Below are positions 39,306 to 50,784 of a stretch of 64,000 bases of DNA, piece by piece. The notes beneath the pieces are model-generated. The model was not told the origin of the DNA and ran no database searches. It saw nothing but the letters and a program-made list of their open reading frames with translations. How positions within the stretch are numbered: the stretch's first letter is position 1; every line of letters begins with the position of its first letter. The stretch covers positions 299,944 through 363,943 of the IMG/VR virus record IMGVR_UViG_3300021963_000021; one strand, written 5' to 3'. A program made the translations under genes and the position numbers.

Positions 39306-39592
39306 TGCTACAACTAAGATTTGAACTAAAGAATCCTTGGTCTAAAGATCGTTTTAAGAATCTAGGCTGTGTCAGCGGACGCATTTCCAAGAATAAAGCG
39401 TGGGAATTAGAACACACATTCTATGATGGTCTCATAGCAGACTGTGAGTTTAAGTTCACGACCAAAGAAGATCATGCTGGTCTAAACATTATGATAGGTG
39501 TTCTAGGCTACGCTGTTCATTTCAGCATCTACGATACTAGACACTGGGACTACGAAAACAACTGTTGGCAAGTTTATGAAGATTTGCGCTAG
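39305..39592 (+). CDS. hypothetical protein whose TAG stop lies inside the tRNA
   Basis: 95 aa; ends GATTTGCGC-TAG, with GCGCTAG as the tRNA acceptor 5' strand. Confidence 0.7.
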   Translation: MLQLRFELKNPWSKDRFKNLGCVSGRISKNKAWELEHTFYDGLIADCEFKFTTKEDHAGLNIMIGVLGYAVHFSIYDTRHWDYENNCWQVYEDLR

Positions 39593-39660
39593 AAGCCTAA
39601 TGGTCAGGCACGGGTCTCTAAAGCCCAGGATAGCAGGTTCGATTCCTGTCTAGCGCACCA
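39586..39660 (+). tRNA. amber suppressor tRNA (anticodon CUA)
   Basis: Acceptor GCGCTAG/CTAGCGC + ACCA; D-arm GCCT/AGGC; anticodon arm GGGT-CTCTAAA-GCCC (CTA at 39618-39620); T-arm GCAGG-TTCGATT-CCTGT. Confidence 0.85.
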
Positions 39661-42226: not shown

Positions 42227-43294
42227 ATGACTTACTTTCTTAAAATGGGCACCACTTTCCGTGTCAGCACCAAAGAAGCTCTTGACCTACATGAGCAACT
42301 GCCTGCTGGCAACTACGTGGTTAAGAAAGACGAAATGACTGGACAACTGTTCTTGGAACAGATTGACAAGTTCGAGTTCAAAGGCAAGATCTACGGCGAT
42401 GCTAATCGTCGTGCTGAACGTATCCTTAACACATTTATGGATCGAGATAACAGCACTGGCGTTATGCTCAACGGTGAGAAAGGTTCAGGCAAGACTCTGT
42501 TGGCTAAGACGCTGAGTATCAAAGGCTACGACATGGGCATTCCTACTATTGTTATCAATGCTCCTTGGTGTGGTGACAAGTTCAATGCGTTCATTCAAAT
42601 GATTGAACAGCCTGTGATTATCATCTTTGACGAGTTTGAAAAGGTCTACGATGAGCAGGAACAGGAACAGATGCTGACATTGTTGGATGGTGTTTACCCT
42701 TCAAAGAAAATGTTTGTATTAACCTGTAACGACAAATGGCGTGTAAACAGCCATATGCGTAATCGTCCTGGTCGTATCTTTTACTCACTGGAGTACAAGG
42801 GTCTTGAAGAAGACTTTATTCGTGAGTACTGCGAAGACAATCTCAATGCTAAAGAGCACATCGAAAAGATCGTGGGCATCGCTGGCACGTTTGATCAGTT
42901 CAACTTCGACATGCTGAAAGCCATGGTCGAAGAAATGAATCGATACAACGAGACTCCGCAAGAAGTCATGATCATGATCAATGCTCGTCCTGAGTACAGC
43001 AACACCAGCCGTTACGCTGTCAAGTTGGTGCGCAATGGTGAAGAGCAGGACATCGAGTTCCGCGAGTGGGAAGGCAATCCTTTGACCAAACACATTTCTA
43101 TCGACTACAAGGTCGTGGAAAACAAAGGTACAGAGGAAGAAGAATGGGACTGGAACAATGTTCGATTCACTCCTGCGGATCTCAAGAAGATCGACGATGC
43201 TGGACAGAAGTTTGTGTTTGCCAACGCAGATGGGTCACAACTGGTGCTTCAGAAAGCCAAAGAGAAAGAATACCGTTACTGGGACGCTTTCTAA
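42227..43294 (+). CDS. AAA+ ATPase
   Basis: GEKGSGKT, IIFDEFEK, RNRPGR; start MTYFLK at 42227 after RBS GAAAG. Confidence 0.9.
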   Translation: MTYFLKMGTTFRVSTKEALDLHEQLPAGNYVVKKDEMTGQLFLEQIDKFEFKGKIYGDANRRAERILNTFMDRDNSTGVMLNGEKGSGKTLLAKTLSIKGYDMGIPTIVINAPWCGDKFNAFIQMIEQPVIIIFDEFEKVYDEQEQEQMLTLLDGVYPSKKMFVLTCNDKWRVNSHMRNRPGRIFYSLEYKGLEEDFIREYCEDNLNAKEHIEKIVGIAGTFDQFNFDMLKAMVEEMNRYNETPQEVMIMINARPEYSNTSRYAVKLVRNGEEQDIEFREWEGNPLTKHISIDYKVVENKGTEEEEWDWNNVRFTPADLKKIDDAGQKFVFANADGSQLVLQKAKEKEYRYWDAF

Positions 43295-43296
43295 TA

Positions 43297-43319
43297 AAAG
43301 CCCCGCAAGGGGCTTTTTT
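43297..43319. terminator. bidirectional terminator
   Basis: aaagcccc-gcaa-ggggcttt. Confidence 0.8.
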
Positions 43320-43491
43320 ATTCTCTACCCCAATTGATGTTTAACCATGCTCTTTCGTGTATGTAATGTAATACAGTCAATACAATGTTGGCCATGATTG
43401 CTCCGCTCCATCCTGCCCATATCGCAGTAATCAGTGTTGCTATGATTCTCCAGCATATTGCTCTTGCTATAGTCCGTTTGTGTGTTTCCAT
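43318..43491 (-). CDS. DUF2061-like small membrane protein (not in ORF track)
   Basis: METHKRTIARAICWRIIATLIT...YIHERAWLNINWG. Confidence 0.75.
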   Translation of the reverse strand: METHKRTIARAICWRIIATLITAIWAGWSGAIMANIVLTVLHYIHERAWLNINWGRE

Positions 43492-43528
43492 TTATACTCC
43501 AATAAAAAAGCCCCTTCCGGGGCTTTGA

Positions 43529-44203
43529 TTAATTTTTCTTTCTTATCTCTGTTCGGTAATACTGTTTAGCAGTAAGAATAACAGCACCAACAAATGGTAA
43601 TATCTTTTCTACAAAATCATGTAGTGGGTCATTCCATTTGTCAATAAAAGGTTCGTGTACTATCATATTGCCTGCCACATAGTATAAAACAAAAGCACCA
43701 ATGTAAATTGTGCTAGGATATTTATCAAGTATGTTAGCGACTAACGTGCTACCAAACAAGATGATAGGTACACTAATTAGTAGTCCAGCGATGATTAAAA
43801 TCCAATTACCACTTGCGGCACCTGCGATTGCTAGTGCGTTATCTAAGCCCATGACAGCATCTGCCATTACGATTGTGCCCATTGCTCCCCAGAATGTTGT
43901 AGCAGCTCTGACATTACTATGATCGTTGTTGTTAGAAGTTAACTTCCAAGCGATGTAGATCAACGCAAGTCCGCCGACTAGTCTTAGCCCAGGAATCATT
44001 AGCAAATATGTAAGAGCCGCAACACAGGCAAAGCGAACACCTACAGCACCAAAGGTACCCCAAAGCATAGCTCGTTTACGTAGGGGTTCTGGTAGTTGTT
44101 TAGACGCCATTGCTATAACCAGTGCGTTTTCGCCTCCTAGTACAACGTCTATTAAGATGATGGCTATTAAAGCCCATAAGAATTGAAGTGAGAGAATTTC
44201 CAT
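43529..44203 (-). CDS. TerC/YjbE family membrane transporter (putative Mn2+ efflux)
   Basis: IDVVLGGENALVIA, ADAVMGLDNALAIAGAA, multiple TM helices. Confidence 0.92.
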   Translation of the reverse strand: MEILSLQFLWALIAIILIDVVLGGENALVIAMASKQLPEPLRKRAMLWGTFGAVGVRFACVAALTYLLMIPGLRLVGGLALIYIAWKLTSNNNDHSNVRAATTFWGAMGTIVMADAVMGLDNALAIAGAASGNWILIIAGLLISVPIILFGSTLVANILDKYPSTIYIGAFVLYYVAGNMIVHEPFIDKWNDPLHDFVEKILPFVGAVILTAKQYYRTEIRKKN

Positions 44204-44220
44204 AAGTTTCCTTTAAATTT

Positions 44221-44306
44221 ATGGTCTCGTCTCTTTGTCTACACACCGGGCTTGCGCCGTGATGACGATGTATAAAACCTTTTCAGGTTGACTACTCCCC
44301 AGGAAA
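44221..44306 (-). ncRNA. yybP-ykoY manganese riboswitch
   Basis: Minus strand TGGGGAGTAGTC...ATCGTCATCACGG-CGCAAG-CCCGGT...GACGAGACCA matches the GGGGAGUAG/CGUCA/CGGU/CRAGACC landmarks; sits between TATAAATA and the TerC RBS. Confidence 0.82.
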
Positions 44307-44349
44307 TATTTATAATAAGTAACATAGACATTAACAAAAGGAGATTAAC

Positions 44350-44928
44350 ATGTCAAAATAGATTGAATATGCTTGTAAGGACATAGTGTTTCACTTTAAC
44401 AAGAAGCACTTAGAAGATCAGACCATTCCCATGTGGGTCTTAAAATTCCATGGCGAAACCCTGTATGTAAATCACGTTGATTGTACTGTTGCTTGGTCAA
44501 CAAAAGAAACGCCTGATAACACACATACCAAAGGCAGCATCAAAGTCAAAGACGTACTGCTACGTATCAATGATGCCAACGAAGCCCAAATATCTCAATT
44601 AACACTGGTAGACAAGTTTAGGTTACGAAACCAAAAGCTGGGTATCACACGAGTGATGTTTAGCCCTAATGTCGCATTCCATAAAGCTCTACAGAACAAC
44701 GAGTTCAAGCATGGTCCGTTGAAACACATCCGTGGTGCTTGTGCCAGTTCGTTCGTGATCACTGATCTCACTGTGAAATCAGAAGTCACTATGGCCCTGT
44801 TAAAGTACAGCAACCAATTTAGGATTGTACAGCCCAACGAAACTTATTATCAGCAGTATGACAATGTCAAGGGCGAGAACCTACATGTGGATTATGGACA
44901 TCCTAGCACACCTTTTGAGTACAGTTAA
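44350..44928 (+). CDS. conserved phage protein with in-frame TAG at codon 4 (MSK*IEYACKDIVFHFNKKH...)
   Basis: RBS AAAAGGAG 7 nt before ATG 44350; TAG 44359-44361; same frame as ORF-track GTG 44386, which has no comparable RBS. Confidence 0.7.
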
Positions 44929-50620: not shown

Positions 50621-50697
50621 GCCCCTATAGCTCAATAGGTAAGAGCACCCGACTCATAATCGGTAGGTTCCTGGTTCAAATCCAGGTGGGGGCACCA
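50621..50697 (+). tRNA. tRNA-Ile2 (CAU, lysidine-modified)
   Basis: Cloverleaf with CCGA-CTCATAA-TCGG anticodon arm typical of ileX, CCA end, adjacent tilS. Confidence 0.88.
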
Positions 50698-50700
50698 AAT

Positions 50701-50784
50701 GCCCGCGTGGTGGAAGTGGTAGACACAAGAGACTTAAAATCTCTCGCTTATGGCGTGCCGGTTCGAGTCCGGCCGCGGGCACCA
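50701..50784 (+). tRNA. tRNA-Leu (UAA)
   Basis: AGAGA-CTTAAAA-TCTCT, long variable arm, CCA end. Confidence 0.93.

What the first reader, a model, noticed from the sequence alone, without database searches (positions are those of the whole stretch)
43529..44314. Phage-encoded yybP-ykoY Mn2+ riboswitch controlling a TerC/YjbE transporter, under a late promoter
Seen (minus strand): exact TATAAATA (44314-44307), then TTTCCTGGGGAGTAGTC...CGTCATCACGG...CCGGT...GACGAGACCA, then the RBS AAAGGAAA and a TerC/YjbE ORF. The 5' TTTCCT (44306-44301) is complementary to the RBS AGGAAA (44212-44207), a plausible translational platform. Known: yybP-ykoY senses Mn2+ and commonly controls TerC-family genes (alx, yjbE) in bacteria; riboswitches are rarely reported in phages. 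Inference: a host cassette rewired to a phage late promoter to manage Mn during infection.
Basis: partly seen in the sequence, partly recalled or inferred. Interest (0 to 1): 0.8.

Follow-up and report, generated by a model that had tools for sequence, protein, structure and literature searches.

The report
Compact manganese riboswitch in a jumbo phage
A 364-kb uncultured phage carries a real but stripped-down manganese-sensing RNA switch, fused directly to a phage promoter, in front of a TerC-family membrane metal protein; about 30 related phage sequences share the design, so these phages probably tune this gene to the infected cell's manganese level.

Summary
The 78-nt leader (44300-44223, minus strand) is a genuine yybP-ykoY (Mn2+) aptamer, although Rfam RF00080 does not report it. 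That model, in this copy, also leaves E. coli mntP (41.6 bits) and an L. lactis-type element (38.7) under its 45-bit threshold. Twenty compact phage leaders share invariant L1, L3 and AGACC blocks, and 13 of 23 helix pairs covary. A model built without the window's clade hits the window once (84.8 bits, E 4e-19) and also finds the mntP, L. lactis-type and Paenibacillus riboswitches. The aptamer is the three-way-junction subtype (no P4), already known from E. coli alx and S. pneumoniae mgtA. It precedes a TerC/YjbE gene. The packaging is distinctive. A [C/A]TAAATA box of T4-late type lies 5-8 nt before the first G, so the mRNA should begin at the aptamer. P1.1 is trimmed to 2-3 bp. Its CC, plus AUAA, can instead pair with the start codon (CCAUAA/UUAUGG). 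'Late' timing is unproven. I found no report of a phage-borne Mn riboswitch.

The parts
44307..44314 (-). Promoter box TATAAATA (general form [C/A]TAAATA), T4-late type, with no -35 element
   Evidence: Exact match. TAAATA lies 5-8 nt upstream of the first aptamer G in 29 related leaders, with a 5-nt spacer in 16 of them. Upstream positions carry 0.36 bits or less (0.47 at the most in the 3 positions next to the box), and the base before TAAATA is C or A only. NTAAATA is enriched in intergenic DNA of the window, mostly 5-46 nt before gene starts.
44301..44301 (-). Predicted transcription start (inferred): the 6th base after the box, one base before GGGG
   Evidence: Inference from the established T4 late promoter geometry (box at -13 to -6; my knowledge) and the fixed box-to-aptamer spacing. 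Three window genes have box, 5 nt, then ATG, which fits the same start distance. Not measured.
44223..44300 (-). Mn2+-type (yybP-ykoY) aptamer, 78 nt, three-way-junction form
   Evidence: Models R1 and R2 hit 44301-44222 at 91.2 and 84.8 bits. The consensus fold has 23 pairs, 13 with compensatory changes. 98.9% of cells pair, against 22-49% when partners are slid.
44292..44298 (-). L1 5' strand GGAGUAG; the two preceding G (44300-44299) form P1.1 with C44223-C44224, plus U44301-A44222
   Evidence: Invariant in all 29 aligned leaders. The register is taken from the canonical L074 element, where CAAAGG pairs with CCUUUG. RNAalifold shifts the register by one within the G run.
44259..44265 (-). 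L3 loop UCAUCAC, with the Mn-contacting adenosine at 44263
   Evidence: CGUCA is invariant in the alignment, although the search pattern required it. The loop matches the published L3 forms UCA41AUUC (L. lactis) and ACA48UACU (X. oryzae), in which this adenosine's N7 contacts Mn2+ (PMC6754395).
44232..44238 (-). Junction linker ACAAAGA, occupying the place of helix P4
   Evidence: In the R1 alignment the E. coli mntP P4 hairpin is an insertion at exactly this point. A longer phage class (L059, L060, L071 and others) has a hairpin here.
44200..44224 (-). Expression platform: hairpin CCAUAA (44224-44219) / UUAUGG (44205-44200), with the Shine-Dalgarno AAGGA (44213-44209) in the loop and the start codon in the 3' arm
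   Evidence: Present in the MFE fold. The CCAU:AUGG anchor is found in 19 of 19 compact leaders, and positions 5-8 pair in 17, 13, 14 and 12 of 19 with both A-U and U-A. Anchored stems average about 6 bp in the compact leaders, against about 3.5 in shuffles. The hairpin state is at -22.1 and the P1.1 state at -20.9 kcal/mol.
43529..44203 (-). TerC-family gene, YjbE subfamily, 224 aa
   Evidence: PF03741 at 3.8e-43 over profile positions 2-177 of 178. TIGR03717 at 203.2 bits (cutoff 134.8) over positions 2-176 of 176.
43507..43526 (-). Intrinsic terminator, an 8-bp G+C-rich stem followed by a T run (TTTATT), closing a one-gene transcription unit
   Evidence: it starts 3 nt after the stop codon.

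Best explanation
This is a one-gene phage transcription unit made of a promoter box, an aptamer, a 19-nt platform, a TerC/YjbE gene and a terminator. The leader is a compact three-way-junction member of the yybP-ykoY manganese riboswitch class. Transcription probably starts one base before the aptamer, so P1.1 is only U-A, G-C, G-C. Without Mn2+, the two C's of P1.1 and the following AUAA pair with UUAUGG, burying the start codon in a hairpin with the Shine-Dalgarno in its loop, and translation is low. When Mn2+ docks L1 against L3, as in the solved structures, P1.1 is held shut and takes the two C's. The remaining A/U-only stem is unstable, the start codon opens and TerC is made. This is an ON switch, like all characterised members. 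TerC would then export Mn2+ or load it onto membrane or secreted proteins in the infected cell. Shown here: the aptamer's identity and fold, the conserved box and its spacing, the conserved hairpin, and the TerC family assignment. Inferred: the transcription start, the ligand, the ON direction and the role of TerC.
For: Aptamer: covariation in 13 of 23 pairs with 98.9% pairing. The leave-clade-out model hits the window once at E 4e-19. Phage-only models recover validated riboswitches at the positions RF00080 reports: the L. lactis-type L074 at 26 bits, E. coli mntP at 22.3, Paenibacillus yjbE at 19.5 and alx at 14.7. RF00080 itself hits phage relatives that keep P4: L071 at 34.3 bits (E 1.2e-5), L085 at 24.5 and L060 at 23.1. 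The L3 adenosine is retained. Platform: the hairpin is conserved with A-U/U-A exchanges and beats shuffles. CCAT follows the aptamer in 25 of 29 box-bearing leaders against 7 of 69 bacterial-type leaders, and ATGG lies 14-25 nt on in 24 of 29 against 2 of 69. The two states are within 1.2 kcal/mol, and the residual A/U stem costs +2.7. The literature describes Mn2+ stabilising a weak P1.1 against strand invasion, and P1.1's 3' half alternating with the platform (PMC6754395, PMC12153347). Promoter.
Against: There is no experimental datum of any kind. RF00080 gives no hit on the window even at E<=10. A 2-3 bp P1.1 is far shorter than the bacterial median of 6 bp, and it is not shown that so short a helix can transmit binding. 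The window's hairpin is weak (-3.4 kcal/mol; anchored-stem shuffle p = 0.054). Slid controls pair fairly often in these A/U-rich arms. A subgroup of relatives (L060, L066, L078, L082) lacks the hairpin. The transcription start is inferred only. Close TerC relatives (76-77% identity: L008, L015, L018) have no aptamer at all, so the switch is dispensable.
Confidence: 0.6

Rival explanations
1. The aptamer is real, but it signals by another route than the start-codon hairpin. Candidates are the reader's 5' UUUCCU pairing with the RBS in transcripts that start further upstream, Rho-dependent termination, or mRNA decay.
For: UUUCCU and AGGAAA are complementary in the window. The E. coli mntP leader is also subject to Rho (PMC11647493, title and abstract). 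The window's hairpin is weak.
Against: The UUUCCU segment is not conserved in any relative. No minus-strand sigma-70-type promoter upstream of the box passed the scan. The CCAU...AUGG arrangement is the feature that separates phage-type from bacterial-type leaders.
Confidence: 0.2
2. The three-way-junction aptamer responds mainly to a signal other than Mn2+ alone, such as alkaline pH together with Mn2+ (as in E. coli alx) or Ca2+ (which binds the S. pneumoniae mgtA aptamer more tightly).
For: Both characterised three-way-junction members show such behaviour (PMC12153347, PMC13594968, PMC6649816). The phage aptamer shares their junction type and, with alx, a TerC-family target.
Against: By sequence the phage aptamer aligns better to mntP (22.3 bits, end to end) than to alx (14.7 bits). 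The Mn-selective adenosine is kept.
Confidence: 0.15
3. The leader is an inactive relic: the aptamer-like leader no longer switches, and TerC is made constitutively from the phage promoter.
For: P1.1 is reduced to 2-3 bp. Close relatives express TerC from the same kind of box without any aptamer (L008, L015, L018).
Against: L1, L3 and AGACC are invariant, and helices covary across leaders whose TerC proteins have diverged to 55% identity and even to a different TerC subfamily. That pattern indicates purifying selection on the fold.
Confidence: 0.05

Closest known systems
E. coli alx riboswitch (yybP-ykoY class, controls the TerC-family exporter Alx)
   Same: Three-way-junction aptamer, a TerC-family target and translational control in which the 3' half of P1.1/L1 alternates with the ribosome-binding region (PMC12153347). 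Detected by the phage model at L098:1879-1951.
   Different: The alx platform is long (helices P5 and P6, with a terminator) and is pH-tuned. The phage platform is about 19 nt, a single hairpin. The match is weak (14.7 bits). The phage P1.1 is 2-3 bp and begins at the predicted 5' end of the mRNA.
E. coli mntP riboswitch (yybP-ykoY class)
   Same: It has the same ends (UGGGGAGUAGCC ... GGCGAGACCA) and aligns end to end with the phage model. It is also a translational ON switch (PMC12153347).
   Different: mntP has a four-way junction, and its P4 hairpin is an insertion where the phage has ACAAAGA. Its platform exceeds 100 nt, and its target, MntP, is not a TerC protein.
L. lactis yoaB and X. 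oryzae aptamers (solved structures of the class)
   Same: L1 and L3 sequence blocks, the Mn-contacting adenosine, and a weak P1.1 switch helix stabilised by Mn2+ (PMC6754395). The L. lactis-type element L074 is found by the phage models at 26 bits.
   Different: These have four-way junctions, a 6-7 bp P1.1 and transcriptional terminator platforms (L074).
S. pneumoniae mgtA riboswitch
   Same: Described as a canonical yybP-ykoY structure with a three-way junction, P2 stacked on P1 plus P3 (PMC6649816).
   Different: Transcriptional control of a P-type ATPase, and Ca2+ also binds. Not compared by sequence here.
Phage-encoded glutamine riboswitches (Melnitz, Mosig, cyanophages)
   Same: Riboswitches carried by T4-like aquatic phages. 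The authors call riboswitches 'a rare feature in phages' (PMC9004378).
   Different: A different class and ligand, with different controlled genes (tmRNA, psbA). No fusion to a promoter box has been described for them.

Membership tests
yybP-ykoY (manganese) riboswitch, Rfam RF00080 | Conserved L1 strands: GGGGAGUAG on the 5' side and (A/G)AGACC on the 3' side | tested here: met
   Present at 44300-44292 and 44228-44223. Invariant in 29 aligned leaders and identical to E. coli mntP.
yybP-ykoY (manganese) riboswitch, Rfam RF00080 | L3 loop with the invariable adenosine whose N7 contacts Mn2+ | tested here: met
   GUC-A(44263)-UCAC, compared with UCA41AUUC and ACA48UACU (PMC6754395). Metal contact itself was not tested.
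yybP-ykoY (manganese) riboswitch, Rfam RF00080 | Helices P1.1, P1.2, P2, P3.1 and P3.2 supported by covariation | tested here: met
   23 pairs, 13 with changes on both sides, and 98.9% of cells paired against 22-49% slid. P1.1 itself never varies, so it is uninformative.
yybP-ykoY (manganese) riboswitch, Rfam RF00080 | Four-way junction including helix P4 | tested here: not met
   The window has a 7-nt linker in place of P4. Validated members alx and mgtA also have three-way junctions, so this feature is typical rather than obligatory.
yybP-ykoY (manganese) riboswitch, Rfam RF00080 | Score at or above the RF00080 gathering threshold (45 bits) | tested here: not met
   No hit on the window at gathering or at E<=10. 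Controls also fail the threshold: mntP 41.6, L074 38.7 and Paenibacillus 15.4 bits. Phage relatives with P4 score 23-34 bits at E down to 1.2e-5.
yybP-ykoY (manganese) riboswitch, Rfam RF00080 | Reciprocal recognition: a model of the candidate's family finds validated members | tested here: met
   R1 and R2 find L074, mntP and Paenibacillus, and R1 also finds alx. There were no other hits at E<=1 in 269 kb.
yybP-ykoY (manganese) riboswitch, Rfam RF00080 | P1.1 switch helix of several base pairs whose 3' strand alternates with the expression platform | tested here: inconclusive
   Alternation is supported by the CC shared between P1.1 and the hairpin. P1.1 is only 2-3 bp, against a median of 6 in 69 bacterial-type leaders.
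yybP-ykoY (manganese) riboswitch, Rfam RF00080 | Located upstream of a Mn-homeostasis gene | tested here: met
   The TerC/YjbE gene starts 19 nt after the aptamer. The other phage class precedes an Alx-like TerC.
yybP-ykoY (manganese) riboswitch, Rfam RF00080 | Mn2+ binding and Mn2+-dependent gene activation | not testable with these tools
   Needs probing, binding and reporter assays.
TerC family, YjbE subfamily (PF03741 / TIGR03717) | Full-length match above the curated cutoffs | tested here: met
   PF03741 at 147.7 bits (cutoff 27.8) and TIGR03717 at 203.2 bits (cutoff 134.8). Transport or metalation activity was not tested.
T4-type late promoter | TATAAATA-like box as the only conserved element, at a fixed short distance from the transcript start | tested here: met
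   Exact 8-mer in the window. [C/A]TAAATA is the only conserved block in 30 upstream regions, with a 5-8 nt spacing.
T4-type late promoter | Used for late (virion) genes and read by a phage gp55-type factor | tested here: inconclusive
   In the window the box precedes virion and tail genes, but also nrdA, a nuclease and an HNH gene. I did not look for gp55 or gp33 homologues, because the rest of the 364-kb contig was not read.

The most novel reading that the evidence does not exclude
A lineage of large aquatic phages has evolved a self-contained regulatory module of about 110 nt, comprising a late-type promoter box, an aptamer that starts at +1, and a one-hairpin platform ending in AUGG. The module signals Mn2+ binding through only two or three P1.1 base pairs and has been moved between two unrelated TerC subfamilies. 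It would be the smallest natural complete Mn2+ riboswitch, and it would show that phages monitor and manage the infected cell's manganese in real time.
Probability: 0.4. Interest if true: 0.7.

Novelty: new variant of a known kind. Interest (0 to 1): 0.55.

Why it matters
Riboswitches are rarely reported in phages, and I found no report of a manganese riboswitch or a riboswitch-controlled TerC gene in one. If the switch works, it shows a phage reading a host metal signal directly through RNA to set the level of a metal-handling membrane protein. It would also provide a natural minimal design for studying how little P1.1 the Mn2+ aptamer needs to transmit binding: transcript start at the aptamer, 2-3 bp of P1.1 and a 19-nt platform. 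There is a practical point for annotation as well. The current RF00080 model misses this whole class and leaves even E. coli mntP under its threshold in this copy. Surveys of viromes with Rfam thresholds will therefore undercount such elements.

Tried and rejected
- RF00080 on the window found nothing, at gathering and at E<=10 on 351 nt. I rejected this as a refutation after controls showed that mntP, L074 and a Paenibacillus leader also fall under the threshold.
- DNA searches of 50,697 phage records with the locus, a 20-kb stretch and the leader alone gave no relative. The only hits were 22-nt chance matches in rIIA genes.
- TerC genes of isolated phages (Bacillus JL and CP-51, Pseudomonas phiPsa374, Rhizobium RHph_I1_18, Acinetobacter 313) have only 1-78 nt upstream, and R1 finds nothing there. 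They are therefore not precedents.
- No minus-strand sigma-70 promoter upstream of the box passed the scan. The TTGACA...TAATGT I saw by eye fails its criteria.
- The search for a cellular donor was inconclusive. The only species-representative genomes above 50% identity are four MAG contigs (73-76%) that lack the aptamer. I ran no further search on this.
- The exact 8-mer TATAAATA is not enriched in the window. I replaced it with the NTAAATA analysis.

Full report
**Observation.** On the minus strand the window reads TATAAATA (44314-44307), TTTCCT (44306-44301) and GGGGAGTAGTC from 44300. Then come CGTCATCACGG, CCGGT, GACGAGACCA ending at 44222, AAAGGAAA, and ATG at 44203. The 224-aa ORF 44203-43529 is a TerC protein (PF03741, 3.8e-43). 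It reaches the TIGR03717 'R_switched_YjbE' model at 203 bits against a cutoff of 134.8. A terminator follows at 43526-43507. The window is part of IMG/VR contig UViG_3300021963_000021, 363,943 bp, a jumbo phage. It has no DNA relative among 50,697 deposited phage genomes.

**The Rfam test and why it does not decide.** RF00080 gives no hit on the window at the gathering score, or at E<=10 on a 351-nt stretch. I calibrated the model on tool-fetched controls:

| Sequence | RF00080 bits |
|---|---|
| E. coli mntP leader (validated) | 41.6 |
| L074, L. lactis yoaB-type element on a viral contig | 38.7 |
| Paenibacillus yjbE leader, textbook-looking | 15.4 |
| Phage relative L071 (keeps a fourth hairpin) | 34.3 (E 1.2e-5) |
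| Phage relative L085 | 24.5 |
| Phage relative L060 (keeps a fourth hairpin) | 23.1 |

All three bacterial controls fall under the 45-bit threshold. The model is present in the library but is insensitive to compact forms.

**Comparative evidence.**
- The TerC protein finds 42 viral loci.
- A core pattern (GGGGAGTAG, TCGTCA...CG, CCGG) finds 42 viral stretches and at least 120 metagenome stretches (80 listed and read).
- After de-replication, 29 leaders share one layout. The layout is a TAAATA box, a 5-8 nt spacer, an aptamer of 77-99 nt ending in AGACC, and then, 14-25 nt later, the ATG of a TerC-family gene.
- In one group of seven contigs a 19-codon leader ORF lies between the aptamer and TerC.
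- The downstream gene is either YjbE-like (190-233 aa, 55-100% identical to the window's) or Alx-like (313-318 aa; PF03741, 6.8e-53).
- The two protein classes cannot be aligned by BLASTP (E = 19), yet their leaders are 62-76% identical.

**Fold.** For the 20 compact leaders RNAalifold predicts P1.1, P1.2, P2, P3.1 and P3.2: 23 pairs, 13 with compensatory double changes. On that structure 98.9% of cells form standard pairs, against 22-49% when partners are slid. There are 84 cells with double changes, against 26 in shuffles. L1 (GGGGAGUAG), L3 (UCGUCA..CG) and AGACC are invariant, although the search pattern imposed part of that. The window's L3, GUC-A-UCAC, keeps the adenosine (44263) that contacts Mn2+ through N7 in the L. 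lactis (A41) and X. oryzae (A48) structures (PMC6754395).

**Reciprocal and independent tests.** Model R1, built only from compact phage leaders, was searched over 269 kb. Besides phage leaders it found only three elements, all at the coordinates RF00080 reports: L074 at 26 bits, E. coli mntP at 22.3 and the Paenibacillus leader at 19.5. R1 aligns mntP end to end, and mntP's P4 hairpin is an insertion exactly where the phage has ACAAAGA. It also finds the alx aptamer at 14.7 bits. Model R2, built without the window and its nearest relatives, gives one hit in the 64-kb window, at 44301-44222(-), with 84.8 bits and E 4e-19.

**Junction type.** The window's aptamer is a three-way junction. This is not new. 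The E. coli alx aptamer is drawn as a three-way junction, against four-way for mntP (PMC12153347). The S. pneumoniae mgtA aptamer is described as a canonical yybP-ykoY structure with a three-way junction (PMC6649816).

**Promoter.**
- Across 30 upstream regions, only [C/A]TAAATA is conserved. Positions further upstream carry at most 0.36 bits (0.47 at the most in the 3 positions next to the box), so there is no -35 element.
- The spacer to the first G is 5 nt in 16 leaders, 6 in 7, 7 in 5 and 8 in 1.
- In the window, 19 of 31 NTAAATA copies lie in the 13% of DNA that is intergenic. Most are 5-46 nt before a gene start in the sense orientation.
- With T4 geometry (box at -13 to -6; established knowledge, not measured here) the window's mRNA would start at U44301.
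- The genes behind the box are mixed: nrdA, a tail-spike-like protein, virion proteins, a nuclease and an HNH gene. 'Late' timing is therefore not established.
- On the plus strand a sigma-70-type site, TTGACT-17-TATAAT (44288-44316, 11 of 12), overlaps the box and faces the divergent gene at 44386. This may contribute to the exact 8-mer in this particular window.

**Platform.**
- What is conserved is complementarity between the aptamer's last bases and the start codon: CCAUAA (44224-44219) with UUAUGG (44205-44200), with the Shine-Dalgarno in the loop.
- CCAU:AUGG is present in 19 of 19 compact leaders. Positions 5-8 pair in 17, 13, 14 and 12 of 19 leaders, with both A-U and U-A.
- Anchored stems are longer than in shuffled spacers in most compact leaders, with p<=0.06 in 15 of the 18 scored compact leaders and 18 of all 28.
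- Slid controls in these A/U-rich arms also pair fairly often, so I rate this evidence as moderate.
- Box-bearing leaders differ sharply from 69 bacterial-type leaders:

| Feature | Box-bearing (29) | Bacterial-type (69) | p |
|---|---|---|---|
| P1.1, median bp | 3 | 6 | 9e-10 |
| Aptamer, median nt | 82 | 101 | 3e-9 |
| CCAT after the aptamer | 25 | 7 | |
| ATGG 14-25 nt downstream | 24 | 2 | |

- In the nearest-neighbour model, the state with P1.1 formed is at -20.9 kcal/mol and the hairpin state at -22.1. Once P1.1 holds the two C's, the leftover A/U stem is unfavourable by 2.7 kcal/mol.

This matches the published mechanism, in which Mn2+ stabilises an inherently weak P1.1 against an invading strand (PMC6754395), with the start-codon segment acting as the invader. 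I infer an ON switch. The ligand, the direction and the transcription start are inferences.

**Limits.**
- Four relatives with P4 (L060, L066, L078, L082) lack the hairpin.
- TerC genes 76-77% identical to the window's (L008, L015, L018) have a terminator, a TTAAATA box and a short leader with no aptamer.
- Many other phage TerC genes are coupled behind an AhpC/TSA peroxiredoxin or a class II aldolase.
- No cellular donor was found.

**Novelty.** The aptamer belongs to a known class and a known junction subtype, in front of the class's usual kind of gene. Three things are new:
- the phage setting, for which I found no published report, while phage riboswitches are called rare (PMC9004378);
- fusion to a phage promoter box, so that the transcript begins at the aptamer;
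- the minimal P1.1 and the one-hairpin platform.

I rate it a new variant of a known kind, with interest 0.55.

Noticed in passing
window 44288-44316 (+): A sigma-70-type promoter match, TTGACT-17-TATAAT (11 of 12), lies on the opposite strand. It overlaps the TATAAATA box and aptamer L1, and faces the divergent ORF that starts at 44386.
   Followed up: partly
window 43318-43491 (-): A small 57-aa membrane ORF with a sub-threshold DUF2061 match (22 bits, cutoff 23.1) lies just after the TerC terminator and has its own terminator (43296-43317). In L023 and L024 the DNA just before TerC appears, by eye, to encode a similar C-terminus, suggesting a recurring DUF2061-TerC pairing.
   Followed up: partly
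window 18750, 23920, 47162 (-): Three genes have an NTAAATA box, exactly 5 nt, then ATG. If transcription starts 6 nt after the box, these mRNAs would be leaderless.
   Followed up: no
window 39586-39657, 50621-50694, 50701-50781 (+): Three tRNA genes (57-72 bits), two of them adjacent.
   Followed up: no
L011:532-906 and L020:4164-4529: Related TerC-carrying phage contigs encode permuted (two-piece) tmRNA genes of the betaproteobacterial type (123-146 bits). This hints at betaproteobacterial hosts for those relatives.
   Followed up: no
L011:2471-3010 and L010:2374-2997: In phage loci without a riboswitch, TerC directly follows and overlaps an AhpC/TSA peroxiredoxin gene (L011; similar upstream ends by eye in L021, L028, L030 and others) or a class II aldolase-like gene (L010). 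This links phage TerC to oxidative-stress genes.
   Followed up: partly
L051:6598-6770 (also L056, L068, L070, L072, L077, L087): In seven contigs the hairpin's AUGG starts a 19-codon leader ORF (translated by eye) whose stop lies 1 nt before the TerC AUG. This would make the riboswitch act through translational coupling.
   Followed up: no
L060, L066, L078, L082 (aptamer 3' end to start codon): This subgroup with P4 has CCAA instead of CCAU and no start-codon hairpin. The 3' strand of P4 (UCCUUGG) is complementary to the Shine-Dalgarno region (UUAAGGA), a possible second platform type.
   Followed up: no
L008, L015, L018 (about 60 nt before TerC): TerC genes 76-77% identical to the window's have a terminator, a TTAAATA box and a short leader with no aptamer. 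The riboswitch has therefore been gained or lost within this clade.
   Followed up: partly
L061:7865-7947 (-): A 356-kb viral contig carries an aptamer without a promoter box. It has a 5-bp P1.1, ends in AGACU, and is followed not by TerC but by an ORF whose N-terminus looks, by eye, like a lipoprotein signal peptide.
   Followed up: no
Rfam RF00080 on L050:3462-3558 and L074:2299-2393: In this Rfam 15 copy the manganese model (177 positions, gathering 45 bits) leaves the validated E. coli mntP riboswitch (41.6) and an L. lactis-type element (38.7) under the threshold. This is a sensitivity gap that matters for annotation surveys.
   Followed up: yes
window 42227-43294 (+): An AAA-family ATPase ORF (PF00004, 4.3e-12) converges on the TerC/DUF2061 pair.
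   Followed up: no
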